A DNA stretch of 64,000 nt from assembly GCA_002269645.1 (NCBI GenBank), contig NIVC01001456.1, forward strand, positions 62,001 through 126,000, given 5' to 3'. The notes beneath the pieces were generated by a model that saw only the letters and a program-made list of their open reading frames with translations, made no database searches and was not told the origin of the DNA. Shown here one piece after another: positions 190 to 33,178 of the stretch. Origin of the DNA: Macrostomum lignano (taxonomy: Eukaryota). The translations under genes and the position numbers were made by a program. Position 1 is the stretch's first letter; every line of letters begins with the position of its first letter.

Positions 190-431
190 ACTTCGTCGGG
201 CGTGAGCTCCACAGCCAGACGAATCACCAGCAGTCTCTCGGAGCTGTCCAGGCTGCGGTACAGCGTGTAGTTGGTGAAGTTGGCTGGCACGCAGTCGTCC
301 AGCAGGCAGGAGATGCAGTGCAGGTAGTACATCAGCCTGGCCACATTGTCGTTTGGTACGGCTGCCGTAGTGCCAGAGTGTTCAATGCGCAGTCGCTGGT
401 TCTCAAATCGAGCAAGTGCTAATTGACTCAT
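190..431 (-). CDS. CaaX-family paralogue 1, exon 1 only (rest lies left of the window)
   Basis: 75/81 aa identical to exon 1 of the paralogue at 6728-6487. Same phase-2 donor (GAA GT|GTAAGT at 189). The start of intron 1 is also similar between the two copies. Confidence 0.8.
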
Positions 432-1179
432 TTCGGCTTGTTCGGAAATTTGATTTGGGCACCTGTTGAGGTTTTTTATCGTTTTTGCCTAATTTTATCC
501 GTTTTTATAGGCTAAAATGTTTTGCCTTTCAAGATAAGACAAGATAAGACAAGAGAAGAGTGGAAGGAAGAGAGATGAGGGGAGAGAAGAGAGATGAGGA
601 GAGAGAAGAAAGATGAGGGGAGACAAGAGAGATGAGTAATATGTGTACCATGTCACTATGTGTACCCAAGGACCACTAGAAGTTACCGTTGTCCCATGAT
701 TTTGCGGGCCGCACGGCCCACGGAATCGTCAATGTGTGCCCGCGATTTTAGTCTATGGCATTTATTATTAAGCGTAGAAAAACATAAATTTATCGAAGTA
801 ACAGTACATGCTAGCCAGCATAACAAAAGTACATTTATAAATGTGACATAGTGACACGATGAACTTTGCTATAGGTTGCATGCACTGTAGTGTTGACTCG
901 CTAGCAGTGAAGTTGTTATTGATCGGCTTAGAGATTGTATTTTATTCCACCCCACCCCATGCGCGCGTTTGAATCTGTCTGCACCCACCACCTCAGTGCT
1001 AAATAATAAATGTGAACAGCCTGGCTCTCAAACGAGCACCTTTTACTCACTCCTGCAATTCCACACTTCTGCCTCGCTTAACAAAGTTATCACAATAAAC
1101 AATACGTCAATAGCAGAATAGTTCATCAATGCTTCATCAAAAGCCATGCAGCGTTAAAGATAGAAGCTGAGTCTTACAC

Positions 1180-1530
1180 CGTCTTTCTCAAGCACTGTTT
1201 GTCTCCTTTACAAATCGATGGATACTAGCCCGAAAGCCACGAATCGTATCCGGTGCATAGGTCTTCGTTCCAAGCACAGGATTAGCTCGCAGACTTACGT
1301 ACCAGAGGCGCAGATAGCCGTCTAAGTAGCTTTCAATGTCATCAGGCAGGTTTTTCTCTCGAAGAAATTTCTTGAACCGATTAATTTGATTCTTAGTGGT
1401 TGCTAAGGTGGATGCCGACTTTGACGACTGTTCAAGTCGTTTGATGTCCTCTAGTTCTTGTACATCTAAGTCGCGATACGAATCTTCCTGAGTCCGTAGT
1501 TGATATGAAATTGAATTGGCTGCAGAGTCT
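1180..1530 (-). mobile_element. Degenerate Crypton-like (DUF3504/tyrosine recombinase N-terminal) fragment
   Basis: Manual minus-strand translation gives SKSASTLATTKNQINRFKKFL, then after a frameshift LDGYLRLWYVSLR...YAPDTIRGFRASIHRF. This parallels the motif order of the ORF at 3134-2406. Not in the ORF track. Confidence 0.6.
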
Positions 1531-2124
1531 ATAGAAAATTTTGTCCTTTTATATATTGTTCTAAAAGTGGAAGTTCCTTATTTTACAATAAGATACTAAA
1601 GATTAGCTTCAATTCGCCCCCAGGTCAGGCACCCCTAGCCCGCCCAACTATGCACACTCAGCATTTACACTCTACATGTATTGCGCTCGGACTTTGAGAG
1701 AGTACTAAACCCAATACTTCTGCAATGCACCGGAGCGAATCTCTGTCTATTATAGTTAGTAGTTAGCTGGAAATACGACTCGTACTCTTAGCGATTTCCT
1801 TCCTCCCACATCTCCCACAAATCTACCCATCTCTACCACCTATTCCCATGTCTATCCAACTCTCCACACTTTTACACACCTATTAACACGTTTAACCACC
1901 CATTTCCACCACTAGCCATGACTTCTATCCACCCTTACCCACCGCGCTCTAACCCTCCGAACTGAAAATTTGCTAACAAAAAATTATCGAGAAAATACTG
2001 AAAGCTATAGCTGTCACTTCATCTGTTTTCAATATTCAAAAGCGTAGGGGCTCACTTATACAGAAAAATGTACTCGACTAACATACCATTATATAACCAG
2101 GCAGTTTTGGTTTTTTCCATCCAG

Positions 2125-2282
2125 TTTCATCCAGTTGCGAAAAATCAAGCTAAAATCAAATCAAGCTAAAATCAAATCAAGCTATTTTTCCATCCAGTTG
2201 CGAAAAATCAAGCTAAAATCAAATCAAGCTAAAATCAAATCAAGCTATTTTTCCATCCAGTTGCGAAAAATCAAGCTAAAAA
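2125..2282. repeat. 63-bp tandem repeat, ~2.5 units
   Basis: CCAGTTGCGAAAAATCAAGCT recurs at 2131, 2194 and 2257. Confidence 0.9.
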
Positions 2283-2328
2283 AGCAATGTAATTATTAGT
2301 TATTACCTAATTCACTGGAACTGAATTA

Positions 2329-4202
2329 TAGCATTTTGCAGTCAAGTTTGAACTGCGGGCATTGTATCACGCTGGCGCGCGTTAGATGCACGATTTACTG
2401 TGCGTCTAATGTAGGTGTCTATGGCAATTTTCTATCTGAGTAAAGGCAACAAGCGTGCGTCTAACGCGTGCGTGTAATGCACGGAAAGTGAGTAGCACCT
2501 CTGGAGATTTCCGATCGAAGTAGTCAGACAGCCTCTTCAGATCAACAGGCTCGATCGATTGGAAGTGTCGGGCGCGTCCGCCTCGGGCAATGAAGATTCT
2601 GCCCATTGACTTCAGTGTCGTATTGGAAGCATAGAATGCGTCGTCAGTTAGAATATTGATTCGCCTTGTCGACATGAAATGCCGGTAGAGCGCAGCTCGG
2701 ATACAAATCAACGTGGCTGGAGCAAAGTATTCGCCATTCCTCTTGCGAAGTGAGCCATAGAAGTATCGAAATAGACTGTCGATCTCGCGCGGTGTAGAAG
2801 TCGCCAAATCACGCTGAACTGACGGATGGTTCTCCATGAAGCTCTGCAACTTACCGACATAATATTCGGTAGCCTTTGTCACACTTTTACTAGCAGCGGT
2901 GTCCTCGATTTCGGAAACGAGCTGTTCCAATTCAAGTAGTTCAGCTTCTTCGTCAGGTATCTTCTTGAAAAGTGCCTCCAGAAGATCCTCCTCTTCTCGA
3001 TCAATTGCCGACTCCGGTAGATTATCAGGCTCGTTCAGAATGTTGTCAATCTCATTGGTGGACAAGCCGGAAATCATTTCGTTTGGAAATTTGCTCAGAT
3101 TCAGAAGTCTGACTTTAGTTGGTGGCTCAGCCATATTCTCTCACAAGTGATTTTAATTTAGCAGCTTCTTATTCCCTTCTTCGCAACACTCAATCAACTT
3201 GCGTGCCTTTCACGCATTTTTGTCTATGGTTAAGACAAATTAACTGAGCGTGCATCTAACGCGCCATCTAAAGTATTAAGCCAACGTAATACAATGCAAC
3301 TCATACATCGATTTTGCGCGCTCAAATGGTCTATGCACGAGTGCGCAGCGCACGAGTCAGTGCATAGACCATTCAAGCACGCAAAATCGATGTATGAATC
3401 CTTCATTCAAATTAGACGCTTGACCAGATCTCACTGCTGGCACAAATGCTATCTATGGCCTAGACAAAATCACACTGGTGGGCACTCAACTCAGACAAGG
3501 GGCATTCAAATTAGACAAGTTCTCAGGCGCATTGGCTGGGCAATTCAAGATCGTGTTGCGTCTGTTGTCAGACAACGATTCTGTGAACCCTGAACTCGCT
3601 TCAGGTACATCGCCATCTCTTGACAGGATTTTCATCGAAAAAAGTTGTCCATCCAGTGCTCGAGAGACTGTTGAAATGTCAATCGTTGGTATTGCGGGAA
3701 ACTCAGACAGAAGCGATTCCCGCATTTGCCCGAGTGTCATCAGAGGGTTGGCATTCAACAAGGCGGCCAGATGGTCCTTCATTGCAGGATTCATTCGACG
3801 GTGCCTGGCTCCTCCCCTTGGTAGCGCGTATCGCTGGCCATCCTGAACAAACTTGTTCCATATGTTGTACACTGATGATCTCTTGACATCCAACATGTTG
3901 GCAATTTCAGCCACAGAGTCACCACGTTGGCATGCCCCAATAATGAGGTCACGCTTCTCTCTGGAAATTCTTGCATAGCGACGAATCGGATTGTCCATGG
4001 TCTTTCTCTCTGGCACACATAGACTTTCCGCTGCTTGTCTAATTTGAATGCCCGTTGTCTAAATTGAGTGCCCGTCAGTGTGTTTCAGTTTGTGCCACAG
4101 ACATAAAGTTCTGCTTGACTTGGGGACGGATTCTGAAATTTGGCTCTTCCCTTCTTGTCTAATTTGAATGCCCGCAGTTCAAACCTTGACTGCAAAATGC
4201 TA
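2329..4202 (-). mobile_element. Internally deleted Tc1/IS630-type DNA transposon with TIRs
   Basis: Left end TAGCATTTTGCAGTCAAGTTTGAACTGCGGGCATT matches the reverse complement of 4157-4202 apart from one indel, with TA flanks. ORF 4016-3486 encodes a paired-like HTH DNA-binding region (DSVAEIANMLDVKRSSVYNIWNKF...ISTVSRAL) with no DDE domain. A ~20-bp subterminal repeat CTTGTCTAATTTGAATGCCC occurs at both ends. Confidence 0.8.
2364..3407 (-). mobile_element. Crypton-like element (ORF 3134-2406) inserted inside the left TIR of the Tc1-type element
   Basis: The ORF has the Crypton/ZMYM/KCTD1-type core (IDSLFRYFYGSLRKRNGEYFAPATLICIRAALYRHF...NILTDDAF) but no catalytic C-terminal half. The insert is bounded by CATT direct repeats (2360-2363, 3404-3407), and the interrupted TIR resumes as CAAATTAGAC at 3408. 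Confidence 0.7.
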
Positions 4203-4429
4203 TATAAAGGACTAAAAGAGGATTTATTGAAAGACGACAATCACACCATTAACACGCAAATGATTCTTTAATCAAACCATACAAAAATACCGAAGCAGAA
4301 ACATTACAGAAAACCGCATCAAATTACGGTCTGATAAGCAGAACTCAATCAAGGATTCAACAGTCTAAAATAGATTTGCTTGTAAAAAAGTTGCATTCCG
4401 GTCTGTTAGCAGTCGTTTCACTCTTCAGC

Positions 4430-6728
4430 CTACAGCAGAGTGCAGCCTGAGCTTGACTTTCTGCAACAAAATACAGGCGGTGAGAGAATCAAGCAATTCC
4501 TGCTTTTCATTGTCTATGGCTTAACGATGACGTTAGGGGGTTAGAGAGCCCAGCTCAGTGGTTAGAGAGTCGGACGCACGACTTGAAGGTCGGGGGTTCG
4601 ATTCCCGATACCACTCGAACAATTTGTGTCCTTGAGCAAGACACTTAACTCTGCATTGGTTCGGTTCACCCAGCTGTAAAATGGGTGCCAGCATAAGCTG
4701 GGGTAATTGAGGGTGTGTGTGGCGAGCCCCCCCCCCATGTCCTTTAACTGAACAGCCGTACGCAGCCTTCAGATGTGCCGCGCAATAGCTGCGTTCGTGC
4801 TGTCGGTTGCATATATGGCCTAATTGAGGCAGGTGTACGCTCGTTATAAATTATTATTTCTACATGCACACTCGATTGTGCGGAGTGAAGTGATCGATAA
4901 AGTCTAAAATGCTATACTAGTATGCCTTTCGAATAGATGAATGAATCTGACCAAAGCATACCTTCGAGCGGTCGCCTGTTCCCGCTGCATCTCCGAGCGG
5001 ATTTCCATCAGCGGGTTCAGGTAGTTTCTGTTCAGCCAGCCCTGCGTGTAGGCCATGACCTCGATCAGCTTCTGGCTGCTGCCGACCTGTCGTTGCAGGG
5101 CCATCATGGCGGCGCCGCCAGACTGAATCCCGAGAGCGGTCAGTGTCTCGCTGAGCGACGAGAACTTGAGGAACATGTTGCATTTGTCTTCTGGGAGGCG
5201 GGACACTGGGATGAACAGTGGCCTGAATTGACAATGTTTGAATATTAGTGATTTATCGCGATAGATTTTTAATGAACGCATTATATGCATAGCTTAAAGA
5301 TGCGTAAGCGTGTTTTTTGTGCTGCAAGCGATATCTAAAACCGTGCTAAATGCTCTTTCAGCTTAAAAAATTAGAATTTAGCAAATAAAGCATTGAATTA
5401 CAACGAAGTTTATCTGGACAGAAGTTTTTTGCTTGGTTCAAATTAAAAACTCTACTTTTCCCCATCTGGTCCCAAAGGGAGAGCATTACGGCATATGCTT
5501 AGGATTATAAATGATTCTAGATTGTAGATTAGTAGTACGAGTAGCATAAAACGGCCGCAGGAAATTCCGTGGAAATACCGTGACTAGTTCGCGTACTAGA
5601 GAGATAGCTGGCAATGTTAAAAATAGTAGCGCCAGGACGATCAGCCGTTGCTCATTGAGAATAGAAGAGATAAAGTTTTGGGGGAAAGCGCAGAAAGAGG
5701 TGTGCACAGGTGGCAGCCCTATAATTGCTTAAGGCTTACAAGCCATTGAGCACCAGATATTGAGCAACTATTGCAACTATAACCATTTCTCAGTAAGCCA
5801 CGCCCTGGCAGTACTATCTTAAACATTGCCACGTATCTCTTCAGTAGATAAACTAGTAACGGAATTTCCACGGAATTTCCACGGATTTTCCCCAGTTGTC
5901 TTCTTTCAACTTCTAACTTCTTCTCTGCTTTGGGTAGGAAAATGTGAGCACAAATCTCTGTGTGAGCTTAGATTTCTGAACAATTTAGACTACTGAAAAA
6001 GTAGCCGAATAAGGATTTGAATCGCAAACTTTTACCGCATAAAAAGAAACGTCTGTAAAGACTGAGAGTGGTGGGAGAGGACGGGCGTATGACTGACTGA
6101 CGAAGGCAAACAATAAGCTAGAAATCCAGTGTCGATCTGCCAAAGCGAGGTTGGACCCCCACTTTTAGTGTGTCACACTGTGTCTAGACAAGGTTCCTAT
6201 CGAGGTACTTACTAACACTTACTTAGGTTACTCGCCTGTGTTAGAATTCTATTTAACTATCAGTATTAACAAATTGAATTTTTCATGCACACTACGGTAT
6301 GAGATTCGCTTCACATTCTTTTCTCACTACTCGACAGTAGACGTTCTTTTAATTGTATGGCGGCGTTGTTCCAGCCGTTCTTCAATACAACGGCTCTACG
6401 GCTAAGTTTGGTGATGTTGTCATTGATTACTTCTACTAATTTGAAAACAAGTCAGTGAACTACATCCCGGATGAGACTCCACTTACACCTTGTCGGGCGT
6501 GAGCTCCACAGCCAGACGAATCACTAGCAGTCTCTCGGAGCTGTCCAGACTGCGGTACAGCCTGTAGTTGGTGAGGTTGGCTGGCACGCAGTCGTCCAGC
6601 AGGCAGGAGATGCAGTGCAGGTAGTACATCAGCCTGGCCACATTGTCGTTTGGCACGTCTACCGTAGTGCCAGAGTTTTCAATGCGCAGTCGCTGGTTCT
6701 CAAATCGGGCAAGAGCTAACTGACTCAT
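4430..6728 (-). CDS. CaaX-family paralogue 2, 3 exons, 177 aa, ends RRKSSSGCTLL*
   Basis: Exons 6728-6487, 5222-4962 and 4460-4430. Both introns are phase 2 with GT-AG sites, giving a 534-nt open frame to TAG. Same exon structure as the paralogue at 13300-14090. Confidence 0.85.
4536..4815 (+). mobile_element. tRNA-derived SINE family 1 with a CORE(MIR)-like central domain
   Basis: A-box-like TGGTTAGAG and B-box GGTTCGATTCC, followed by GTGTCCTTGAGCAAGACACTTAAC...CTGTAAAATGGG. Three dispersed copies in the window. Confidence 0.8.
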
Positions 6729-7457
6729 TGTCTCGTGTCAGGCTTTGCGGTCGTTCGTTTGCGGACTTTATGAGCTAGAGAAATTTGTGTTTAGAATTTG
6801 TGTATTTCTTTATATAGGTCTTTTTTTGCTACAGATGGCTCATTACTGGCATGTTTGGAATTTCGAAAGGGTGCACTTGTGCTTATCAAAGTTTTGTCGA
6901 ACTGACTGACTTGAGATTCAGCTTCAAACAGTTTTAAAAAGTTTCTAGCAGCATCCGAAATGCTAGGAGTTGACATTTAGTTGCGGTCAGACTTGCTTGA
7001 GTTTTTGCCTGACCCGCTGTCAAGACGCCAAATACCTGCAGTGTGATTGTTTTAATCTCCGTGATAGTGCATATAATTATAAAAAATACCGCACCACTTC
7101 GGTAAGGCATAATTCGAACTTGTTATCAAAGTGGAAGGTCTAAGGTTCTGGAACTCGGGCGCTTATCAGGAATTCTTAGCGATTGAGAGTTGCACAAAGC
7201 GGTGGGCAATATAAATAATTTTATCATTGTTTTCAAAGTCAACGAGCTCTTTTTCTTAAATTTTTCTGGCTTTGGACTGTTCAGCTGGGGCTTATCTTGA
7301 GGATGTTGACAAAAAATCAGCATGACTTTACAGTAAGATAGTGAAAGCAACAGATAATAAAATAGCAGCGCTTCAATTAAATTCTCAAAACGATTTTCTC
7401 AACGCAAAAAGTAAATTTATCACTTCCTATCATACTGCAATTCACCCGCCAGCAGGG

Positions 7458-8740
7458 ATGAGTCAGGTAGCTCTGGGACAAATGAGGCAGCGCCAGCTGC
7501 ATGTAAAGAGAAATCTACTACACCTGCCAATGTGCCAGATGACGACGTTGCACGCCTGATATACTACTTGAGTTGCATAAGAAATGTACTGCCTGATTGC
7601 ATGCCAGCCCACCTGACAAACTACTCCAACTAAAACAATCTGAGCCACTGGTAATTGAGATCGCCAAGGCGTTCCCGCCGAGCAAAATGTGAGCACCCGC
7701 ATCGTGGAAAAAGACTTTCGCGCTGCGACCCCCGGTTCGATTCCACACGCGGCCACATTCATTGCTTGTGCATGGAAATTGGCCGAATGGATTATCGAAC
7801 GATTAACACCCTGCGCAGGGCCCTGCTTGGACTCAACCGCAGGGACATCAGGGCGGTGAATATGGCCCTCTCGGGTCATGGCTGTTTTGCCAGGCATCGT
7901 CACCTCCAGAAGAAAATCCGCAGTGAGGAATGCCCATTCTGCCTTTCCGGTGTCGAGAATGCGGAGCACTTCATCTGTGAATGCCCCGCCTTTACTCAGG
8001 ACAGGCTCACCTACCTCAGCCCAAACCTGAACCTCTCCGACGTTTTCGAGCCCAAGAATCTCGGCCAGCTCGTCCGCTACCTAAAGGCTACCGGGCGAGC
8101 GACAATCTACCTCCTGGACTCTCCGGAGGGGAACCGCGCTGCGGACACCGGCACCACCGAATCTCCCTGCGCGACACCGCACAACTAGCTGCCCGTGGTC
8201 GCCAGGGGTTAGCAAAATGGGCGGCAACGCCTCCTCGCTGTTTCCGGACGCACGGAGCCCCCTGCAGCTGAGTCAAGTCAAGTGCTCAGGAGTCAGCGGA
8301 ATGGGCAGAGTCGCCTCACAACTGGCTGTGGGACGATGTCGCCGAAAGTTGCGCCAGGTTGCCTCACGACCCTATAGTCGTAATTTTACACTTGCTCCCT
8401 GTTGCTGCCTCGAGGGCCGACGCAAGCTTGCAGGTCCCAAACTGGCAGGCGCTGACCCATTGAGCAAAGGGTATCCTCCTTTCCTCACCTTTGCCCTGAT
8501 CTTTTTCAGCCCGCTAGCTCGTATTTTTCAAAGTTGAAAATGCCGGCGAACGATGCGGTGCCTTTCTGAAGTTCACTTCGCTGGAGGAGACGATCAGCGC
8601 CCTGGGAATTGAAAGTGACGGAGCCACCGTGATGGCTCTCAGACGGCAGGCGTCATCGGAGCACCTGCTCGAAGTGTTTGTCTACGAGGAGGCCTGGGTT
8701 CGCAGAAACTACTGAGAAAGATTCTGGAAGAGTAAGTTTT
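7458..8740 (+). pseudogene. CaaX-family paralogue 3, pseudogene
   Basis: Exon 1 (7458-7688) reads MSQVALGQMRQRQL..VPDDDVARLIYYLSC..LTNYSN*, with a frameshift, an in-frame TAA and a deletion, and keeps the AT|GTGAG donor. Exon 2 starts near 8510 (FLKFTSLEETISALGI..VFVYEEAWVRRNY*) and has a premature TGA at 8713-8715. Confidence 0.8.
7695..8385 (+). mobile_element. 5'-truncated non-LTR retrotransposon (I/LOA-like), C-terminal CCHC finger plus 3' UTR, in intron 1 of the pseudogene
   Basis: LSGHGCFARH..CPFCLSGVENAEHFICECP is a C-x2-C-x8-H-x4-C motif typical of LINE ORF2 C-termini. Stop at 8188. Confidence 0.8.
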
Positions 8741-8899
8741 ATTGCCGCCATAACACACGAATTGCCATCAATCGCACATTTGTATAGTTATAAAGGATGT
8801 TTTGAAATTTGATTACTTGATATTTTTTGCATTAGACCAAGGTGTGAAACCGGTGCGAGACGATGGATAAGACTGAAAACTTTTCGCTGCTTAGGTCTA

Positions 8900-9594
8900 C
8901 TTAGATTGTAACAGGAGATGAGACTTGGGTCTACGAATGGGATCCTGAGCTGAAGCGCCAGTCAGCACAGTGGCTTCCAAGGGGATCAGCAAGCCTGGAG
9001 AAGGTGCAGCGCAAGCAGAGTTCAACGAAGGTGATGCACATTATCTTCTTCGACGTCCGTGGCATTCTGGTGGACTGGTCTGTGCCAGTCGGTACCAAGG
9101 TGAACGCCGAATATTACAAATGGATTCTGCAGGAGAAACTGCGACCGGCGATCAGAAAGAAGCGACCTGGCTTGCTGGAGAGAGGCGTCATTTTTCATCA
9201 CGACAATGCGCCTGTGCACCGCGCCAGAAGAGTGGAAGAGCTCCTGGAGTCCTGGGACTGGGAAGTTCTGCCTCAGCCGCGCTATTCGCCTGACTTGGCT
9301 CCGGCGGACTTCTACGTTTTCCCAAGGATGAAGGAGAGTCTTCGTGGTCAACGTTTTGTCTCGGTGGAACAGATTAATAACAGTGCTTCATCAGCTCTCC
9401 GGCATCTGGCCATCGGCGGTTGCAGAACTGCCTTTGAGGCGTGGGTGCGCCGCTGGCAGAAGTACGTTGACCTCGGCGGCAAATTTGTAGAGTAACTATG
9501 AGTTCATTTTGCAGTTGAAAAGTTTTGTTTATTTTTGGGTCACTAGTTTGTCTTTTATAGCATAGCGAAACTTACTTTTGGGATAGCCCTCGTA
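8900..9594 (+). mobile_element. mariner (DD34D) transposon, 3' half with right TIR
   Basis: IVTGDETWVY, HHDNAP and YSPDLAPADF are present, with 34 residues between the second and third Asp. TIR ...CTTTTGGGATAGCCCTCG followed by TA at 9593-9594. The N-terminal half and left TIR are absent. Confidence 0.92.
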
Positions 9595-9744
9595 GCTGTT
9601 CAAAATAGGTATCAATGGCTTGTGATCAGTGACAATTTCAAACTCATGAAGGCCCTCCAGGAAGAGTCTGCACTTCTGAGTCGCCTAAACCACAGCCAAC
9701 AGTTCTAACTCGATCATCGCATAACGCGACTCGGTCTCGGAAAT

Positions 9745-10412
9745 AAATCTAGAACCAGCTTAAACCACACGCCAGCTTCCGTCGGTCTGCTTTTGTTTCA
9801 GCAAGAAGCCGATTCCCTTCAATCGGGATGCATCCGTGTGAAAAGCTGTTAATTTGCGCTGGTCATAGTATGCAAGTGTGGGAGCGATTGCCAGTCGGCG
9901 ACGGGCTTCTTCAAACGCCGTTTGATGTTCGTCTCCAAATTGAAAAAGATTCTTCTCCGACAGAAGTGGTCTCAATGAAGCTGTGACTTCGGCGATTGCA
10001 GGCGTGAATGTGCCAACTTGGTTAACAAGGCAGAAGAAAGCTCAAAGATCTGTGATATTTTTTGGAGTTGGAAACTCGCGGATTGCTTTTACCAACTCCG
10101 GATTGATGCTGTAGCCATCAGCTGACACACGAAACCCAGCGAAGTCAACTTGCTGCTCACAGAAGACGAACTTCTTCTTATTTAAAGAGACTCCATTATC
10201 CTGACAGCATTTTAAGAATCTCCTTACTGACTGCATGTGCGACTCATTGTCGGAGGTTGCAATCAAGCAGTCATCAACGACATGTCGAACTTCTTTGAGT
10301 TCTTGAAAAGTTTGGTCTAGTCTTTGATTGTAGTTCTCTGATATGGAGCTAATTCCAAATGGTGCCATCTTGAACATTTAACGACCAAACGGTGTGATAA
10401 ACTGATAAACGA
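9745..10412 (-). mobile_element. Ty3/Gypsy-type LTR retrotransposon pol fragment (RT to start of RNase H), decayed
   Basis: APFGISS, VVDD (YxDD box), DFAGFRVS, FPTPKN and TDAS motifs in order, with an in-frame stop at 10042-10044. Confidence 0.88.
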
Positions 10413-10834
10413 CCAAAGGATGTTTTGAAATTTGATTATTTAATGTTTTTTGCATTAGACCAAGGTGTGAAACCGGCGCCAGACGATGGATAAGACTGAA
10501 AACTTTTCGCTACTTAGGTCGACACCATGACTGGCCTAGGTTACAACTACACCTTTTTACTGAAACTAAAGACTCCAGATATATCGGGAGTTTGAAAGTA
10601 TACGAAGTAACATCAGAATTTTAACATATTTTTTTATTTATTAGGTAAATGACACCTATTGTACGTATTTATTAGTGTTTGTATTCCTTGTTTTTTAACA
10701 GAAACTTGATTGTGCATACGGTAATAAGACACAATGGCGATATCACTGGTTTACTTAACCACTCTATTGAATTCACTCTCCAGGTCAGGAGGTTGTCGAT
10801 TCACACCCCAAGGGGGGGGGGGGCAAACCGCAAG

Positions 10835-11000
10835 TCACAGAGAGTGTACATGTCTGACGATTAGAAAGTCAGGGCCGCTGTACACCCTGTGTGAGCGCGT
10901 TTACGAGTGTGTGCCTCATCTGTAAAGTATTGGCGCTCTTGTGGGACGCAGTCGCTGTAGACATTGAGTCGGAGTGCTCACAGCCCTCCTTGGAATGTAC
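10835..11000 (+). mobile_element. SINE family 2, partial copy
   Basis: GTGTACATG..ACGAT..GGGCCGCTGTACAC..GAGTGTGTGCCT matches the body of the copies at 16921-17289 and 40155-40390. Confidence 0.65.
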
Positions 11001-11439
11001 AGATTTTACAGATTTTTATTAAACAAAAATAATTAAGTCTGAAGCCCTCACTCATTTTTTTGATACCTTGTACGAGTAAAAGCAGGGACAATGAAGACAC
11101 CACCCACGAGAAAAGCAAGAATCGCAATTATTTCCAGTTGCAGTGTGGCCATGTGGTACAAAAACAATAAAAAGACGGGCGAAGAGATTCCTGCTAACAA
11201 GCGCTTCGACACTTGACCCCCTCTCCAGTACTACTCGAGTTGGCGTACTCAGGCTGGTCTCATTGAGCAGTTCTTAACTTGGGTCTAAAAGGTTTGCACG
11301 CAATTCTTAGTGCGAATATCTTTTGCTTGGCTGGAGGGTGGGGTTCTGTCAAATTCCTTGAGTTATTTTGTAGAATTCCTGTCTAAAAGTTTTTCACCGC
11401 TTAAAAAAGCTGTTTATAGATCCGCCTTGCGCTTCTGTG

Positions 11440-12500
11440 TTTCAATCTGTGTTTCTGTGATCTGTGATTCTGTGATTTGTGATTCTGTGATTCTGTGATT
11501 CTGTGATTCTCTGATGTGATTCTGTGATTTGTGATTCTCTGATGTGATTCTGTGATCTGTGATTCTGTGATTTGTGATTCTGTGATTCTGTGATTCTGTG
11601 ATTCTCTGATGTGATTCTGTGATTCTGTGATTCTCTGATGTGATTCTGTGATTTGTGATTCTGTGATTCTGTGATTTGTGATTCTGTGATTCTGTGATTC
11701 TGTGATTCTCTGATGTGATTCTGTGATCTGTGATTCTGTGATTCTGTGATTCTGTGATTTGTGATTCTGTGATTTGTGATTCTGTGATTCTGTGATTCTG
11801 TGATTTGTGATTCTGTGATTCTGTGATTTGTGATTCTGTGATTTGTGATTCTGTGATTCTGTGATTCTGTGATTCTGTGATTCTGTGATTCTCTGATGTG
11901 ATTATGTGATCTGTGATTATGTGATCTGTGATTTTGTGATTCTGTGATTCTGTGATTCTGTGATTCTGTGATTCTGTGATTCTGTGATTCTGTGATTCTG
12001 TGATTCTCTGATGTGATTATGTGATCTGTGATTCTGTGATTCTGTGATTCTGTGATTCTGTGATTCTGTGATTCTCTGATGTGATTCTGTGATCTGTGAT
12101 TATGTGATCTGTGATTTTGTGATTCTGTGATTCTGTGATTCTGTGATTCTGTGATCTGTGATTCTGTGATTCTGTGATCTGTGATTCTGTGATTCTGTGA
12201 GTCTGTGAGTCTGTGATCTGTGATTCTGTGATTCTGTGATTTGTGATTCTGTGATTTGTGATTCTGTGATCTGTGATTCTATGATTCTGTGATTCTGTGA
12301 TTATGTGATTCTGTGAGTCTGTGATCTGTGATTTTGTGATTCTGTGATCTGTGATTCTGTGAGTCTGTGATTTGTGATTTTGTGATTCTGTGATCTGTGA
12401 TTCTGTGATTCTGTGATCTGTGATTCTGTGATTCTGTTATCTGTGATTCTGTGATTCTGTGATTCTGTGATTTTGTGATTCTGTGATCCGTGATTTGTTA
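11440..12500. repeat. Degenerate 8-mer satellite (TGATTCTG)n, ~1.05 kb
   Basis: Read directly from the sequence. Confidence 0.97.
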
Positions 12501-13299
12501 TTCTTGCTCAGTTTGGATTATGGATTTCTGAGGATCTTCATGCAGGCATATTTTGCCGGCTAAGTTGTTTCAAAAAGTCTGAGAGAGCCTCTATAGCCAT
12601 GTTTGGGCAACTTGGCTGAAAGTATAACCAGATATACAGGTAAAAAGTGCCAACAGACGCCTCCGAGTTTATTCAGAGTTCACACGGAGTTCAGCGGTAC
12701 TTTTGCGTAGCTGCCAGCTCAGTGCACTGGACTGCAATTTCACCAGGCCGAAACTTCACATTGCCGAAATGGCTTGCACGCTCTTTCATAAGTATCGTAG
12801 CTATACTTCGGCAATGTGAAGTTTCGGCCTAGTGAAAGCGCTCCGTTTTTCTGACGTACTGTGACAGCGCATTTTGTTGCCATGCTGCGTGTTGCAGCTT
12901 GAAATACAGAAACAGCGAGTTGGCACAGGCTCGATTCTTAAATCTAAAAGACCTGGCGTTGTCGCAGTTAATAACAGCTCAGAACTCGCCTCTATTGAAG
13001 AAATTGTTGTGCATATTTTTCTAATTCCAAATTCAAGTGCACTTTATTGTACCTGCGCTAATAAAGTGTGTGGTGAGGATGTCAAGATATTTTTCGTGCA
13101 TTATCTCCAGGATATTCAAATAAGACTTTGTGAAAAGCACCCGGGGCCAGCAAATTTCTCAGTTTAGCCAATAAGAATGCTGAGGAGTCCAGACTGATTA
13201 AAATGCATAAATACGCCGGCTCAAAAGGCAGAAATAGCTGATAGAGAAATTCTATCGACTTGCTCAACTCAACAATCTCTTCAACGGCAAGCAGCAGCA

Positions 13300-14090
13300 A
13301 TGGCCGCCCTAGCGCACATGCAGCAGCGCCAGCTGCAGGTTGAGAAAACTGGCAGCCGAACGACCGTCCCCAACCACAGCGTTGGCCGGCTCATGTACTA
13401 CCTGAAGTGCATGACGGACGTGCTTGGTGACTGCATTCCGGCACACCTGACCAACTATTCCAATTGCTACGGGCTGAGCTACTCGGACAGGCAGGTGGTC
13501 ATCGAGATTGCCAAGGAGTACCCGCCCAGCAAGATGTGAGATTTACTGGCTTTGTATTGAGGTGTTCAGCTGCTTCCCGCATGTCTTCCTGCAACATCCG
13601 CGTTGTCAAGTATCCCCATTTTTACCTGTTACATCCGCGTCATCAAGTATCCCTATATTTACCGGCAACCTGCAACCACCCACAGACCGCTCTTCATTCC
13701 TGTTGATGACGCTGGTGACAGCAGCAACGACTTCCTGACGTTCAGCTCCCTGGAGGAAACGATCACAGCGCTGGGCATCCAGGGCGACGGAGAAGCGATG
13801 ATGGCACTGAGACGCCAGGTGTCTAACCAGCACCTGTTCAAGGTGATGGTCTACGAGGATGCCTGGGCTCGCAACAACTATTACGGACCGCTGAGGGACA
13901 TTCAGCGGGAGGAGGAGCAGAGGCGATACCGGCAGCTGCAGGCCGCTCCCTCGTACGGCAGCCGGAAAAAGTGCGTGAGCTCTAGCGTTGAAAAATGCTG
14001 GACTTCCTATTCACCGCTTAGACCAGAGCAATTAAATTCTTAAGTACCTTACTTTACGCTTTTAGAAGTTCCACCTGTGTCCTGCTGTGA
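13300..14090 (+). CDS. CaaX-family paralogue 4, 3 exons, 181 aa, ends GSRKKSSTCVLL*
   Basis: Exons 13300-13535, 13686-13970 and 14066-14090. Phase-2 GT-AG introns give a 546-nt open frame to TGA. Confidence 0.87.
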
Positions 14091-15766: not shown

Positions 15767-18700
15767 TCAGGCATCGCCGATCAGGGCCAGAAGAATCTTG
15801 CGATAATCGCCGCTGGTGTCGTCCTTGATCCATTCGGCCAGGCTCTGCCCGAACTCCTTCTGGAAGGCGGTCTTGATCTGCACCATGTCCACCTCGCAGC
15901 GGCTGATCACGATGCGAAGCAGCGTCTTGTCGTTGGTGCCTGGAGACGAATAGAGGGCGTTGAATAGAGGATGTGCAACCGACAGCTCAGCCGCAGCTAT
16001 TGCGCGGCGCATCTGAAGGCTGCTGCGTACGGCTGTTCAGTCCAAGGGCTGGAGGGTCGTCACACACACCCTCAATTACCCCAGCTAATGCTGGCACCCA
16101 TTTTACCGCTGGGTGTTGAAGCAGTGAAGAGTTAAGTGTCTTGCTCAAGGACACAAATTGTTCCAGCGGGATCGGGGATCGAACCCCTGACCCCGTTCAG
16201 TCGTGAGTTCAACGCTCTAACCACTACGCTACAACCCTATCAAGCCCATTCAGGAATCCAGAGTGTCTCACTCGCTGACTGCGGATCGGTTGTCGCCTTG
16301 AATAGTTACAACATTAGGACAGATATTTTTGCCATCAACCCCTCCCTTTCACTTAAAGTGACACTTTAAATATAGAAAGTCTGAAAACCTCAAAGTTTTT
16401 TTACACAATGCTCAATTTCTTGAAAAATTTTCCTACATTGCTTGTCATGCTCGTTCTCCTTTTCTCTCTGATTGAGCATGATTGAGTCACTTACCCAAGC
16501 CCTTCATCGCCTTCTGCAGCGACTTAGCAAAGTAGGCCGGCTTGTTCTGAATGCAGCGGACCAGAGTCAGCATGGCGCGGAGCAGGTCGCCAGACATCTC
16601 CGCCTTCAAGGAGTCCTCGAGCGTCTTGCCGGTAAGCTTCTCGTATTCGGCAAACAGGGCGCGCAGGTGGGCGTTGTTGTTGCCGCAGAGGATCTCGTTG
16701 AACTTGCTCTCGTCCGTGCCCCACTTGCCGACGCCGGCCTCCTGCAGGGCCTGGGCGTCCTTCTTCACCTGCTCCGGATCGTAGGAGCTGCCCTCCGGCC
16801 GGGCGCCGGTGAGCAGAGACACCAGAATGCGCTTGAAGTGGCCGGATGTGTCCGACATAACGTCGTCCTCAAGTTCGCGATTGTAAGCTGAGTTTGGTGT
16901 GCGGTATTGGAGTGGAAGAGTTTTATTTTTTTTTTATTAGAGGCAGGGGGGTTGTGTGCACCCTGGCGCACTTTAAGCGACATAGGCACACAACCGGCGA
17001 GAGGCATTACTGCCCATTCCGCCGACTCCCCTGAGCAGGCATACAAGCGCGCGGATACGTACGCAGGCACACACTCAAACAGGAGTGTACAGCGGCCCTA
17101 ACTTTATATTATCGTTAGGCATGTACACTTCACTGCGCCTTGGGCGGTTGGCTCTCAAGGCCGTTAATTGCACGAGCAGAGCCAAGCCGAGATTCCAATT
17201 CAGCCCCAAATTAATGTGACTGCACTTGGAATCGAGCCTGGGTCGCTGGCACACCAGAGCAGCTGCGCTACCGCTGGGCTACGGCCCCCTTTGAGTCGAA
17301 GAGTTAGAGAGTTCATGACTCATTGGGATGGCATTGTTTTTAGTTTTTTTTAAGTGCGTGGTGTGTTTTGCCTTTCAGGGTCAGAGGGTGAGCTTTGTGA
17401 GCAAATAGTTGCTGTGTCCATAGTACGTAGTGTATTGTGCCCTTCAGGAGTCAGAGAGCTTTTCTGAACAAATCGTTCGGTTCCAGTAGATTAACTATCC
17501 ATCTGGAATGCTTATTTTGGCCCAGGGCATACAATATGAATCTGATCACTGAAAGCCGAGCAAACTCACTGGCTTTGTAGATTTTCTTGATCTCCTCGAT
17601 CTGGGCCTGCGTCCTGGTGCAGATGATCTCAATCAGGCAGTCCTCGTCCGTGCCCAGGCCCTTCACCGCCTCGCGAAGCTCTTTAGCGTCGTACTCGGCC
17701 GGTCCCAGGCACAGATTCTGGCAGATCTTGTTGAAATTGCCGCTCAGCTCGCTGTCCAACTCGCGTTTGAGATCTTTGCCGTATTTCATCTTGAAGGTGC
17801 GCACAATTTCCATACGCTGGGTGACGGTCCGATGGCCGAGCACGTTGATGATGCTCTCCTCGTTGGTGCCCAAACCTTTCATCGCCTTGCGCAGCTGCTC
17901 CGCATCGGCCGCGGCGCTGAAGTTCGGATACGGCTTCAGCGTGCCCTCCTGGACGTACTCCTCCTGCAAGAAGAAGGCCTCCCCGGCCGGCTCTGGTGGC
18001 TTTTCCTCCTTCAGCACAATGGCGTCCGCCTTCTCGTGGTCGGTCTTTTTCACCTGTAGAAAGTGCAATTTTGCAATTTTTGCAATACGTTCTGCTGCAG
18101 ACACCGATGACTAAAAGAACACACAGATCTAGTTATTCGCACCTCAGTCTCCATTTTGTGACTTGGCGGCGGTGGCGGCTTCTCCGCCTTCTTGGGCGGC
18201 GGCGGCGGGGGCGGCGGCGCAGGGTCCCTGCTGGCACTCTTTGAGGGAGGCATGAACGGCTTCGGTTTTGGATCCGAGCTCCGCTTGTTGATTGACTTTG
18301 GCGCGTGCAGCGGCTTCTTGTGCCCCGGCTTTGCGATGTGGATGGTCAGTAGGAATGAGTCGTCTGACTCGTCAAGTTCAGCTGACAGCACCTGCATCGG
18401 CAATGTGGAAAACTTCAAGCTTCTCATCGGCTTTAGAGTGACAGGCTCGGCGCGAGCAGGATAAAATTCTTAGAAATGAAGACCAATTTGATTATTTCAC
18501 GAGTAAGCTTACCTTGCCAAATTTCTGGTCCTCAATGGCAGCTTGAAATCCTCCATCTTTCCGCGCGAACTGCAGCAAGTGCGCGTAGACGTGCTGCAGC
18601 TGAGTTTTGAAGTCGCCGTCGCCCTTGCTGACGGGCAGGCAGGGCGGATCGGCGACGATCTTCTCAACCTTCTCAGTCTTCTTGGACTCTTCCACTAGGC

Positions 18701-21478: not shown

Positions 21479-22108
21479 ATGGAACCTAGAACATCAAACT
21501 GGGACGTTTCAAAACGTTATAAAACAGACGTTCTGATCGGAAATTGGTTTGAAGAACGACTAGTGTACGATAGAAAGAACCATACGCATCCATCGAGCTA
21601 CAGCATCGACTTTCAACAAAGGGGATACCAGCAGCCAGATGTTGTGCTTCGAAGGAACGGCTGGATTCGCTCTAACGGAGTAGGTAAGGAAATACTGCTA
21701 GCCCATCACGGCGATGCCTACAAGAAAAACTGGATCACTTGGTACGACGAGGACTTCAACGGCCGAGGCTTGCCTAGGAACCCCCCGCAGCGCGACTGGC
21801 ACTCAGGCAACATGGCCTGGAGCCCGGAGCGCTCAGACTTCCCCGTCCAGGGCAGCCCGACCAACTGGGGCTTGAAGGAAAGGCTAGACAAGCGATGGAA
21901 TACCAGTCTACAAGAGCGCTCGACCACGTCAAAGAATGACTTCAGTACTACGTACAACGCGTCATATCTGAAGCCGAGAACGGAGGACTTGCTGGCTGCA
22001 CGACAGCCGAGCTTCCTGCCACCAATCAGCGGGAGGATGCCGGCAAACACCGGCAGTCAGGACAAGTTCGAGGAGCCGGCCCAGAAGCTGTCAGTCGTGG
22101 CCACCTAG
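21479..22108 (+). CDS. CFAP107: Cilia- and flagella-associated protein 107 (C1orf158) homologue, intronless, 209 aa
   Basis: Motifs W...Y...VLIGNWFEER, LLAHH, YDEDFN, PPQRDW..WSPERSDFP..PTNWGL follow the order I recall for human C1orf158. Confidence 0.85.
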   Translation: MEPRTSNWDVSKRYKTDVLIGNWFEERLVYDRKNHTHPSSYSIDFQQRGYQQPDVVLRRNGWIRSNGVGKEILLAHHGDAYKKNWITWYDEDFNGRGLPRNPPQRDWHSGNMAWSPERSDFPVQGSPTNWGLKERLDKRWNTSLQERSTTSKNDFSTTYNASYLKPRTEDLLAARQPSFLPPISGRMPANTGSQDKFEEPAQKLSVVAT

Positions 22109-22479
22109 ACAGCCGCGGTTCTTATACGTTAGCTTGTACCAATACCGAACAATCAGCAGACCTTTGCTATTTGGCCTACTCTTTTTGACAGACTTTTCGC
22201 AAATGGATATCGAATTTCTGAACGGCAACAAACAGAAAAATACATCTTATTTTCACTATTGAACTCTGGCCAAGTACTGCGTGCGAATCAAATTCAGTCC
22301 TTTATGTATAGTAGATGGCTAAGTGTGAAACGTCACTTCCAGGACCTAGTGCATGTATACGCCTCAACATGAGAACTTGACACTCGTAACAGTTTGTGCG
22401 GCACAGTTAGCAAATATAAATTCAAAAGCTCACTCATGCTGCCTTCCTACGCTCGTTTTTTCTTGAAGCACTTGAAGCA

Positions 22480-23075
22480 GTGATGGATGGATGAAGCAGT
22501 GATGGATGGATGAAGCAGTGATGGATGGATGAAGCTCTGATATGGATGGATGAAGCACTGATATGGATAGATGAAGCTCTGATATGGATGGATGAAGCAC
22601 TGATATGGATGGATGAAGCACTGATATGGATGGATGAAGCTCTGATATGGATGGATGAAGCACTGATATGGATGAATGAAGCACTGATATGGATAGATGA
22701 AGCTCTGATATGGATGGATGAAGCACTGATATGGATGGATGAAGCACTGATATGGATAGATGAGGCACTGATATGGATGGATGAAGCTCTGATATGGATG
22801 GATGAAGCACTGATATGGATGGATGAAGCACTGATATGAATGGATGAAGCACTGAAATGGATGGATGAAGCACTGATATGGATGGATGAAGCACTGATAT
22901 GGATGGATGAAGCATTTATATCGATGGATGAAGCATTGATATGGATGGATGGATGAAGCAGTGAAATGGATGGATGAAGCAGTGAAATGGATGGATGAAG
23001 CATTTATATGGATGGATGAAGCAGTGATATGGATTGATGAAGCAGTGATATGGATGGATGGATGAAGCAGTGATC
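22480..23075. repeat. 21-bp minisatellite (GATATGGATGGATGAAGCACT)n
   Basis: Read directly; source of the WMDEALI, LHPSISV and ASSIHIS ORFs. Confidence 0.95.
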
Positions 23076-24163: not shown

Positions 24164-32177
<8,014 letters not shown>

Positions 32178-32733
32178 CTCCAGAAAATTTCAACGCTCTC
32201 AACTCTGAACCAAGCGGCCGTGTGGCGCATGCATGTAGATTTGTAATGATTTAAGAAGGCTAGCGAGAGCTAAAGTTGATCAATACGATTGTGGGACCCT
32301 GAGCAGCAACTCGCCATTGGCTGAGAGCTCTCTCATTAGAATACCTGTGCCCCCCTCCCTGCACTCTGTTTACTCACCTTAACTCTGTCTGAAAACTTTG
32401 TCCAAGCTGTAGAGAAATGTACGAGAAAATTTATGTAATCAAAAGTCTGCATTCTGGCTCTGTTGGGCTCCATAGGAATTGCGCCGCAGACTGGCACAGC
32501 AAGCCGTCTTGAGGAAAGATTGACTGAATTTTTTTAAGTGCACATTTTCTAAGCGCTCACTATGCAAACCATGAAGAATATCTGTGATGCATGCGAAAAG
32601 TCCGTTGAGTATGTAAATTCAATTGCTATATCCAACCGCACAAAATTAATATATTGAAGAACGATGTACCACTAAGTAGGCAAGAATGCTATCAGTTTTA
32701 GAAAAACTCAAGACGGTTTTCCTTCAACTTTCT

Positions 32734-33178
<445 letters not shown>

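What the first reader, a model, noticed from the sequence alone, without database searches (positions are those of the whole stretch)
190..14090. Cluster of an uncharacterised small-protein family with a CaaX box hidden on a micro terminal exon
Seen: four paralogues in 14 kb (431<-, 6728<-, 7458-> pseudogene, 13300->) share the motifs VPN..VARLMYYL.C, LTNY, PLFIPV, FL.FSSL.ET.TALGI and W...NY..PL, with conserved phase-2 introns. The ORF track misses the C-termini. Splicing adds 31-nt and 25-nt last exons that end the two complete copies in RRKSSSGCTLL* and RKKSSTCVLL*. Established: CaaX ending in Leu is the geranylgeranyltransferase-I signal, and basic residues just upstream form the second membrane-targeting signal, as in Rac/Rho GTPases. 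Inference: this is a duplicating family of ~180-aa lipid-anchored proteins with no domain I recognise. The motif is retained despite strong divergence of the two copies, so it is probably under selection. I have an unverified recollection of similar unannotated proteins in arbuscular fungi and cnidarians, which would imply a patchy distribution.
Basis: partly seen in the sequence, partly recalled or inferred. Interest (0 to 1): 0.85.

Follow-up and report, generated by a model that had tools for sequence, protein, structure and literature searches.

The report
Prenyl-anchored orphan protein family, tandem cluster
A flatworm (Macrostomum lignano) gene cluster encodes small proteins of a large, unnamed eukaryotic family whose tiny last exon adds a lipid-anchor signal (CaaX box); the signal is real and conserved, but what the anchored domain does is still unknown.

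Summary
The window is Macrostomum lignano DNA. It carries two intact three-exon genes: copy 2 (minus strand, 177 aa, ...RRKSSSGCTLL*) and copy 4 (plus strand, 181 aa, ...RKKSSTCVLL*). It also carries a lone exon 1 (copy 1) and a broken pseudogene (copy 3). Both introns are phase 2, and the last exons are 31 and 25 nt, exactly as described.

A sister M. lignano locus has five paralogues. Each ends in a micro-exon encoding C-x-[L/V]-L*, and two are already annotated that way. An intronless, transcript-like contig from a relative reads straight through to ...SSGCVLL*.

The family is large: 994 clusters at 50% identity. Named members come from bdelloid rotifers, oysters and mussels, sponges, a glaucophyte and another protist. 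All are labelled uncharacterised. The ~150-aa core has no Pfam, PDB-sequence or Foldseek match.

Of 290 members, 159 end in CaaX. Most others carry a transmembrane tail, FYVE, LITAF, BRI3-like or PH module instead. The best reading is an N-terminal cytosolic domain that must sit on a membrane; here the tether is geranylgeranylation.

The domain's own function is only inferred. The micro-exon is not really hidden, and the remembered fungal and cnidarian members were not verified. Interest is moderate.

The parts
190..431 (-). Copy 1, exon 1 only (80 codons plus 2 nt, intact ORF, GTAAGT donor at 189). The rest lies off the left end of the window.
   Evidence: 94% identical to exon 1 of copy 2. 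In sister locus L003 the matching copy has a terminal CaaX exon but no exon 2.
6487..6728 (-). Copy 2, exon 1 (M1 to the first two bases of codon 81). Encodes VPNDNVARLMYYLHC and LTNY.
   Evidence: The junction matches the break in the alignment to transcript-like contig L002.
4962..5222 (-). Copy 2, exon 2. Encodes PLFIPV, FLKFSSLSETLTALGI and W...NY..PL.
4430..4460 (-). Copy 2, terminal 31-nt micro-exon. Encodes (R)KSSSGCTLL*, a CaaX box with X = Leu.
   Evidence: The same exon is present in public model P0002.
7458..7688 (+). Copy 3 (pseudogene), exon-1-like segment with two frameshifts and a stop after TNYSN.
8510..8715 (+). Copy 3 (pseudogene), exon-2-like segment with degraded PLFIPV, a stop just inside its start and a premature stop after W..RNY. 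No terminal exon is left in this window; L003 still has SSSSCTVL*.
13300..13535 (+). Copy 4, exon 1.
   Evidence: 99% identical to P0001.
13686..13970 (+). Copy 4, exon 2.
14066..14090 (+). Copy 4, terminal 25-nt micro-exon. Encodes (K)SSTCVLL*, a CaaX box identical to that of Cdc42. It is missed by the public read-through model P0001.

Best explanation
**What it is.** This is a tandem cluster of genes for an old, eukaryote-wide, so far unnamed protein family. Each protein has an N-terminal globular domain of about 150 aa. Its hallmarks are VPN..ARLMYYL.C, TNY, N.F, an M in 'KIM', and W...NY..P. A short Ser- and Arg-rich linker follows, and then a C-terminal membrane anchor.

**How the anchor works in M. 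lignano.**
1. The anchor signal is a CaaL box carried on a 25-31-nt last exon.
2. After translation in the cytosol, geranylgeranyltransferase-I should attach a C20 isoprenoid to the Cys.
3. RCE1 then removes the last three residues, and ICMT methylates the new C-terminus.
4. The neighbouring RRK or RKK residues add weak electrostatic affinity for acidic membranes.
5. The result is a domain displayed on the cytosolic face of a membrane.

**What is shown and what is inferred.**
- Shown: the gene structures, the conservation of the signal, and the interchange of anchor types across the family.
- Inferred from established CaaX rules: the lipidation itself.
- Inferred only from context: that the domain works as a membrane-proximal binding or adaptor module rather than as an enzyme. 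Its invariant residues are mostly aromatic or hydrophobic plus one Asn. Its fusion partners are membrane-targeting or ubiquitin- and signalling-type modules.
For: **Gene models.** Gene structures and CaaX ends.

**Sister locus L003** (M. lignano GCA_002269645.1).
- It is collinear with the window at 85-96% identity.
- It holds five paralogues, each with a pyrimidine tract, AG and a micro-exon ending CTLL, CTLL, CSLL, CTVL or CVLL.
- Two of them are annotated with that end.

**Transcript-like evidence.** Contig L002 is intronless. Its alignment to the window breaks exactly at the exon 1/2 junction, and it reads on to SSGCVLL*.

**Selection.** dN/dS is 0.26-0.41.

**Family size and taxa.**
- 994 clusters at E <= 1e-3 and 585 at E <= 1e-10.
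- Taxa: rotifers, Sinanodonta, Magallana, Sycon, Amphimedon, Gloeochaete and an MMETSP protist.

**C-terminal tails.**
- 159 of 290 members end in CaaX. X is Ser in 60, Leu in 49 and Gln in 11.
- Ser is frequent at positions -7 and -6, and extra Cys at -5 and -6.
- About 60 members have transmembrane tails.

**Other C-terminal modules**.
- FYVE, LITAF and BRI3-like.
- PH, in one member that also has an N-terminal Ubl.
- A transmembrane segment followed by BspA-type LRR.

**Orphan core.** The core domain has no Pfam, NCBIfam or PADLOC hit.

**Literature.**
- CaaL/I/M is the GGTase-I consensus, and CVLL is modified by human GGTase-I (PMC11152559).
Against: - No RNA-seq reads from M. lignano itself were examined for junctions 4962/4460 and 13970/14066.
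- The public model of the copy-4 type (P0001) reads through the intron and lacks the CaaX.
- The M. lignano paralogue P0008 has no CaaX in its public model.
- The library type of L002 is unknown, so it could be a retrocopy.
- The basic patch has only three residues.
- About a quarter of family sequences show no anchor. Many are short or cut at the domain's end and look partial, though whether they are truncated was not checked.
- No prenylation or localisation experiment exists.
- The adaptor role of the domain has no direct support. PPxY motifs are not enriched.
Confidence: 0.72

Rival explanations
1. The terminal micro-exons are not used, or are used only sometimes. The proteins would then end in the read-through tails (...RRYALVRF...* and ...KKCVSSSVEKC...*) and be soluble. 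The CaaX-like codons would be fortuitous.
For: Public model P0001 for the copy-4 type is a read-through. The copy-4 donor AA|GTGCGT is not a strong consensus.
Against: Five paralogous micro-exons keep the acceptor and C-x-[L/V]-L* in L003. Two public models and contig L002 use the exon. The read-through tails are not conserved between copies. 55% of the whole family ends in CaaX.
Confidence: 0.06
2. The conserved domain is a small-ligand or lipid-binding module, or an enzyme, that acts on the membrane it is tethered to. It would not be a protein-binding adaptor.
For: - The invariant residues are Met, Tyr, Trp, Phe and Asn (M34, Y35, Y36, F98, N96, M137, W143). These could line a hydrophobic pocket.
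- Tethering to membranes is obligatory across the family.
- The predicted layout is beta-beta, three helices, a beta sheet and a long C-terminal helix.
Against: There is no invariant Cys/His/Asp/Glu/Lys/Ser set typical of a catalytic site. Foldseek finds no lipid-binding or enzyme fold.
Confidence: 0.2
3. The domain is a homotypic signalling or assembly module of innate-immunity type. It would work like TIR, Death or CARD domains on membrane-tethered adaptors such as tail-anchored MAVS or lipidated TRAM. It would have diversified by lineage-specific expansion.
For: - Rotifer proteins dominate the named hits, and several species contribute more than one distinct member.
- Tandem clusters occur in M. 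lignano and in metagenome contig L001.
- Fusions have the cytosolic domain N-terminal to a transmembrane segment plus BspA-type LRR, a receptor-like architecture (P0057, P0110).
- Other fusions carry ZZ, SAP or Ubl modules.
- Some proteins hold two or three tandem copies of the domain (P0006, P0007, P0012).
Against: Only a handful of such fusions exist, and they come from unidentified organisms. dN/dS of about 0.3 shows no sign of diversifying selection. There is no similarity to any known death-fold or TIR domain. There are no expression data.
Confidence: 0.15
4. The C-terminal Cys is S-acylated rather than prenylated, so the tail is a palmitoylation signal and not a true CaaX box.
For: Many relatives have extra Cys residues (CCCTIL) or Cys-rich tails without CaaX (P0083, P0096).
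Against: The Cys sits exactly four residues from the end in 159 sequences, with Ile, Val or Leu at a2. X is almost only Ser, Leu, Gln, Cys, Ile, Phe or Met. This spacing matters for prenyltransferases and not for DHHC enzymes. The extra Cys residues fit the usual prenyl-plus-palmitoyl second signal of H-Ras type.
Confidence: 0.04

Closest known systems
Hypervariable C-terminal tails of Rho-family GTPases (Cdc42 ...KKSRRCVLL, RhoA ...RRGKKKSGCLVL; sequences from my own knowledge)
   Same: A basic patch, then Ser, then C-a-a-L at the very end. Copy 4 has the same CVLL box as Cdc42. CVLL is a GGTase-I substrate (PMC11152559). RCE1 and ICMT processing and membrane binding are expected to be the same.
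   Different: There is no GTPase domain: no P-loop and no Ras-family Pfam hit. The basic patch has only three residues. The tail sits on its own micro-exon.
K-Ras4B and H-Ras membrane-targeting signals (polybasic plus farnesyl; palmitoyl plus farnesyl)
   Same: Rotifer relatives end ...RFSRKKRSSSCVIS, with a basic patch and a farnesyl-type X = Ser. Other relatives end ...CCCTIL, with extra Cys residues as likely palmitoylation sites.
   Different: The cargo domain is different. The M. lignano copies use X = Leu, which points to geranylgeranylation.
Ykt6 versus transmembrane R-SNAREs, and tail-anchored proteins in general
   Same: Within one family a lipid (CaaX) anchor and a C-terminal transmembrane anchor replace each other. 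The functional domain is N-terminal and cytosolic.
   Different: No longin domain was detected. The only SNARE matches are weak (best E = 0.0036, three members). No membership is implied.
LITAF/CDIP1-, BRI3- and FYVE-anchored endolysosomal proteins
   Same: Some family members carry exactly these modules in place of the CaaX box (P0136, P0147, P0072, P0115, P0119). This hints at endosomal or lysosomal membranes.
   Different: The M. lignano proteins have none of these modules. PPxY motifs typical of LITAF- or NDFIP-type adaptors are not enriched.
Ras-associating (RA) domain, the automatic UniRef name of P0001
   Same: Nothing beyond the label.
   Different: There is no Pfam RA hit even at E <= 1. 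The predicted secondary structure is not a ubiquitin-like beta-grasp.

Membership tests
CaaX substrates of geranylgeranyltransferase-I | Cys exactly four residues from the C-terminus | tested here: met
   CTLL* and CVLL* in the spliced models.
CaaX substrates of geranylgeranyltransferase-I | X = Leu (or Phe/Ile/Met), with an aliphatic a2 | tested here: met
   a2 = Leu and X = Leu in both copies. CVLL is modified by human GGTase-I (PMC11152559).
CaaX substrates of geranylgeranyltransferase-I | The C-terminus is exposed to the cytosol (no signal peptide or transmembrane segment upstream) | tested here: met
   The N-termini MSQLALARFENQR and MAALAHMQQRQ are charged. No hydrophobic stretch scores as transmembrane in P0002 or P0003.
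CaaX substrates of geranylgeranyltransferase-I | An isoprenoid is actually attached, followed by -aaX cleavage and methylation | not testable with these tools
   Needs metabolic labelling or mass spectrometry.
CaaX substrates of geranylgeranyltransferase-I | The mature mRNA contains the CaaX-encoding exon | tested here: inconclusive
   Supported indirectly by intronless contig L002 from a relative and by public models in L003. No M. lignano RNA-seq reads were examined.
Ras-superfamily small GTPases | G-domain with P-loop GxxxxGK[ST] and DxxG | tested here: not met
   No Ras, Rho or Arf Pfam hit at E <= 1. No such motif is seen in the sequences.
Ras-associating (RA) domain proteins | Match to the RA profile and a ubiquitin-like beta-grasp fold | tested here: not met
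   No Pfam RA hit. The AlphaFold2 topology is helix-rich and not a beta-grasp.
Unnamed 'LMYYL' domain family (defined here) | Core motifs VPN..A.LMYYL.C, [TR].Y.NY, SPD, N.F, KIM and W...NY..P in this order within about 150 aa at the N-terminus | tested here: met
   Alignments A1-A3 have nearly invariant A31, L33, M34, Y35, Y36, P78, N96, F98, M137, W143 and P151. The profile gives E = 3e-81 (P0001) down to 4e-24 for the 150 best representatives listed.
Unnamed 'LMYYL' domain family (defined here) | A C-terminal membrane-targeting element (CaaX, Cys-rich, transmembrane, FYVE, LITAF or PH) | tested here: met
   The window copies carry CaaL.
Longin/Ykt6-type lipid-anchored SNAREs | Longin domain plus SNARE heptad motif | tested here: not met
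   No Longin or Synaptobrevin Pfam hit in the window proteins. Only three distant relatives show a weak SNARE match (best E = 0.0036).

The most novel reading that the evidence does not exclude
The roughly 150-aa 'LMYYL' domain is a previously undescribed, ancient eukaryotic fold that functions only when held at the cytosolic face of a membrane. Evolution has repeatedly swapped its tether: farnesyl, geranylgeranyl, palmitoyl, a transmembrane tail, FYVE, LITAF or PH. In some lineages it has been wired to extracellular LRR receptors. On this reading it is a new membrane-proximal signalling or assembly module. It would be expanded in bdelloid rotifers and in the Macrostomum tandem cluster, and missing from the classical model animals.
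Probability: 0.35. Interest if true: 0.7.

Novelty: new variant of a known kind. Interest (0 to 1): 0.5.

Why it matters
Prenylated proteins are roughly 1-2% of eukaryotic proteomes (PMC11152559), and almost all well-studied ones belong to a few families such as small GTPases, G-gamma subunits and lamins.

Here the family has about a thousand sequence clusters. More than half of the members examined carry a CaaX box, and the cargo domain has no Pfam entry, no solved structure and no name.

The free exchange of prenyl, transmembrane, FYVE, LITAF and PH anchors is a natural experiment. It says that membrane tethering, not a particular membrane chemistry, is essential to the domain.

M. lignano is transgenic-tractable, and CaaX-type membrane tags have already been tested in its embryos (PMC12633465). 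The anchor hypothesis and the domain's partners can therefore be tested directly.

In practical terms, the copy-4-type gene model and its 'Ras-associating' label in public databases should be corrected.

Tried and rejected
- **Profile libraries.** Pfam at E <= 1 for both proteins and at E <= 10 for 132 relatives gave nothing on the core domain. NCBIfam and PADLOC gave only scattered single hits.
- **PDB by sequence.** Neither the single protein nor the 132-sequence profile found anything below E = 0.29.
- **Structure search.** Foldseek was run with two AlphaFold2 models (pLDDT 76.7 and 83.4) against the PDB, and with the better one against BFVD. The best E-values were 0.77 and 0.33, with TM-scores of about 0.2. 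Similarity to Bet v 1/START, SUKH, E2/RWD and TRAPP-Bet3 folds, considered from the secondary-structure order, is therefore not supported.
- **RA-domain label of P0001.** Not supported.
- **WW-ligase adaptor idea (PPxY/LPxY in the linker).** 8 motifs were observed against 4.9 +/- 2.2 in shuffles, so it is rejected.
- **Basophilic-kinase site next to the CaaX.** 31 were observed against 22.6 +/- 3.7, which is only weak.
- **Bacterial, archaeal and viral relatives.** A motif scan of GTDB genomes and IMG/VR found none.
- **Taxonomic reach.** A profile of protist-type members (A4) was swamped by PH and ubiquitin words and added little. Many cluster look-ups returned no names.
- **Literature.** Searches for the family, its motif and the gene identifier found nothing.
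- **tRNA-like element.** ARAGORN finds no tRNA gene in the tRNA-like element inside intron 2 of copy 2.

Full report
**1. What is in the sequence**

The region is eukaryotic, with GT-AG introns and interspersed transposon fragments and microsatellites. I rebuilt the two complete genes base by base.

- Copy 2 (minus strand) has exons 6728..6487, 5222..4962 and 4460..4430. It encodes 177 aa ending ...QATARRKSSSGCTLL*.
- Copy 4 (plus strand) has exons 13300..13535, 13686..13970 and 14066..14090. It encodes 181 aa ending ...YGSRKKSSTCVLL*.
- The last exons are 31 and 25 nt. All four introns are phase 2 and lie at aligned positions.
- The mechanical ORFs run into the introns, so they miss these ends.

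Copy 1 is present only as exon 1 (431..190). Its similarity to copy 2 covers just 284 nt at 94% identity: the exon, about 40 nt of intron and one base upstream of the ATG.

Copy 3 is a pseudogene. Its exon-1-like stretch (7458..7688) has two frameshifts and a stop. A 5'-truncated LINE fragment sits in the intron. The exon-2-like stretch (8510..8715) has a stop just inside its start and ends in a premature stop. No terminal exon is left, and a mariner-like element follows.

A six-frame pattern scan of the whole 64-kb window for a Ser-rich C-a-a-X* ending finds only the two claimed micro-exons, plus one hit whose matched stretch contains an internal stop.

**2. Organism and independent support for the micro-exons**

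The closest database proteins are from Macrostomum lignano. P0001 is 99% identical to copy 4. P0002 (BOX15_Mlig013201g1) is 95% identical to copy 2.

P0002 already ends ...RRNSSSGCTLL. P0001 is a read-through model ending ...SRKKCVSSRVKKC...NS and carries the automatic name 'Ras-associating domain-containing protein'.

The contig that encodes P0002 is L003 (GCA_002269645.1, NIVC01001794.1). It is collinear with the window at 85-96% identity, so it is an allelic or homeologous copy of the locus, and it extends past the window's left edge. It contains five paralogues:

- a copy-4 type;
- the pseudogene;
- P0002;
- the copy-1 type, which has exon 1 and a terminal exon but no detectable exon 2;
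- a fifth gene, annotated at 174 aa and ending ...SRRQSSGCSLL*.

All five have a pyrimidine tract, AG and a micro-exon ending CTLL, CTLL, CSLL, CTVL or CVLL.

A 996-nt contig from sequencing run SRR28338164 (L002) encodes a 66%-identical orthologue as one uninterrupted ORF. Its alignment to the window breaks exactly at the exon 1/exon 2 junction. It continues to ...SRSSSGCVLL*. That is what a spliced transcript would look like, although I cannot verify the library type.

dN/dS is 0.26 for copy 1 versus copy 2 (exon 1), 0.32 for copy 2 versus L002, and 0.30 for copy 2 versus copy 4. These are real, constrained coding sequences.

**3. The family**

No profile library or PDB sequence search recognises the proteins.

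A profile of the first six relatives was searched with HMMER against 1.84 billion representative proteins. It found 994 clusters at E <= 1e-3 and 585 at E <= 1e-10. The family is therefore large.

Where a source gives a name, it is always 'uncharacterised', 'hypothetical' or 'unnamed'. The named organisms are:

- bdelloid rotifers (Rotaria, Adineta, Didymodactylos), which dominate the named hits, several species contributing more than one distinct member;
- the bivalves Sinanodonta woodiana and Magallana gigas;
- the sponges Sycon ciliatum and Amphimedon queenslandica;
- the glaucophyte Gloeochaete wittrockiana;
- an MMETSP protist.

Many other members come from metagenomes. One short contig (L001) carries two tandem intronless paralogues.

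A motif scan found no relatives in bacterial and archaeal genomes or in viral contigs.

**4. The C-terminus is the family's theme**

Among the 290 sequences in hand, 159 end in C-a-a-X.

- Position a2 is Ile in 129 of them.
- X is Ser in 60, Leu in 49 and Gln in 11.
- Ser is common at -7 (51%) and -6 (43%).
- Extra Cys is common at -5 and -6.
- Arg and Lys are common further upstream.

About 60 others have a hydrophobic transmembrane segment after the domain. Further members replace the tail as follows:

- FYVE (P0115, P0119);
- a LITAF-like zinc ribbon (P0136, P0147);
- a BRI3-like segment (P0072);
- PH, with an N-terminal Ubl (P0052);
- a transmembrane helix followed by BspA-type leucine-rich repeats (P0057, P0110).

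A few members have ZZ, with or without SAP. A few hold two or three tandem copies of the domain before a CaaX.

Prenylated proteins make up only about 1-2% of eukaryotic proteins (PMC11152559). A 55% CaaX frequency, plus alternative anchors in most of the rest, therefore shows that membrane tethering is selected.

**5. Mechanism**

CaaL/I/M is the GGTase-I consensus. CVLL, the Cdc42 box and the same box as copy 4, is modified by human GGTase-I, whereas CaaS/Q is not (PMC11152559). [quoted passage not shown]

I therefore expect the following sequence:

1. geranylgeranylation of Cys-174 in copy 2 and Cys-178 in copy 4;
2. RCE1 cleavage of the last three residues;
3. ICMT methylation;
4. membrane binding helped modestly by RRK or RKK.

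The tails look most like RhoA (...RRGKKKSGCLVL) and Cdc42 (...KKSRRCVLL); this comparison rests on my own knowledge of those sequences. The conserved Ser run could be a phospho-switch, but a basophilic-kinase motif is only weakly enriched.

All of this is inference from established rules. Nothing here measures lipidation.

**6. The domain**

With a 132-sequence alignment, AlphaFold2 gives mean pLDDT 83.4 and pTM 0.77. The core blocks score above 90, but the block means are only 59-69 (first model) and 61-69 (second model) over residues 101-130. That stretch is a Macrostomum-specific replacement of what is a beta hairpin in most relatives.

The order of elements is a short strand, three helices, three strands with inserted helices, and a long C-terminal helix that starts at W...NY..P. 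Foldseek finds nothing in the PDB or BFVD.

The nearly invariant residues are A31, L33, M34, Y35, Y36, P78, N96, F98, M137, W143 and P151. They are mostly aromatic or hydrophobic, and there is no catalytic-looking set.

Together with the fusion partners, I favour a membrane-proximal binding or assembly module. A ligand-binding role and an immune-type homotypic adaptor role are the live alternatives. A WW-ligase adaptor role was tested and rejected.

A negative Foldseek search against the PDB does not prove a new fold. The AlphaFold DB and HHpred were not available.

**7. Verdict**

- It overstates how hidden the exon is, because two public models already contain it.
- It overstates the strength of the polybasic signal.
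- The anchoring mechanism is textbook. What is new is the cargo: a large, unnamed, structurally unmatched family defined by obligatory membrane tethering.
- The distribution among named members is patchy, and there is an active tandem cluster in a tractable flatworm.
- Interest is moderate at 0.5. It would be higher if the domain proves to be a new signalling fold.

Noticed in passing
L003:13640-13882 and 16814-16840 (sister locus of window copy 1, 431..190): The copy-1-type paralogue keeps an intact exon 1 and a terminal CaaX micro-exon, but no exon 2 was found between them. Its terminal-exon region is identical over the 76 nt compared to that of the P0002 gene. Both introns are phase 2, so exon 1 spliced directly to the micro-exon would stay in frame. 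That would give a protein of about 90 aa with half a domain plus a CaaX box.
   Followed up: partly
window 4536-4625 (inside intron 2 of copy 2); similar copies near 15970-16225 and 45557-45861: A tRNA-like element with a GGTTCGATTCC B-box, probably a tRNA-derived SINE. It is repeated in the window and in L003. ARAGORN does not call it a tRNA gene.
   Followed up: partly
window 7655-8188 (+), 9004-9495 (+), 9760-10377 (-), 2406-3134 (-), 3486-4016 (-): Transposon debris around the cluster.
- A LINE ORF2 3' end with a Cys/His knuckle lies in the pseudogene's intron.
- A mariner-type transposase fragment (HHDNAPVH) follows.
- There are reverse-transcriptase fragments.
- A small element has a helix-turn-helix transposase-like ORF flanked by 68-nt inverted repeats (3452-3519 and 4034-4101).
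   Followed up: no
window 11440-12500: A microsatellite or minisatellite about 1 kb long, built of GTGATTCT/GTGATTT units, lies between the pseudogene and copy 4. Many other long simple repeats occur elsewhere (22430-23000, 25061-25585, 31285-31950, 32686-34240, 50063-50755, 53657-54725, 62435-62965).
   Followed up: no
window 17451-18104 (-): An exon-sized ORF with annexin repeats (...GLGTNEESIINVLGHRT..., ...GLGTDEDCLIEIICTRT...). This is a neighbouring annexin gene.
   Followed up: no
window 38887-45356 (-): Several large exons of a ferlin-type multi-C2-domain gene (for example ...NGTSDPYLVVQLGDHKQSFRDEK...). An exon with several hydrophobic (transmembrane-looking) stretches lies at 27079-27810 (-), and an unassigned 209-aa ORF at 21479-22108 (+).
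   Followed up: no
P0001 (UniRef, M. lignano), corresponding to window 13300-14043: The public model of the copy-4-type gene retains intron 2, so it lacks the CaaX box. It carries an automatic 'Ras-associating domain-containing protein' name that neither Pfam nor the predicted fold supports.
   Followed up: yes
L001:393-1079 and 1433-2110 (metagenome ERZ12298652): Two tandem, intronless family members of 228 and 225 aa have transmembrane tails instead of CaaX. They sit on an AT-rich contig, probably from a rotifer or another micro-eukaryote. Tandem duplication is therefore not peculiar to Macrostomum.
   Followed up: partly
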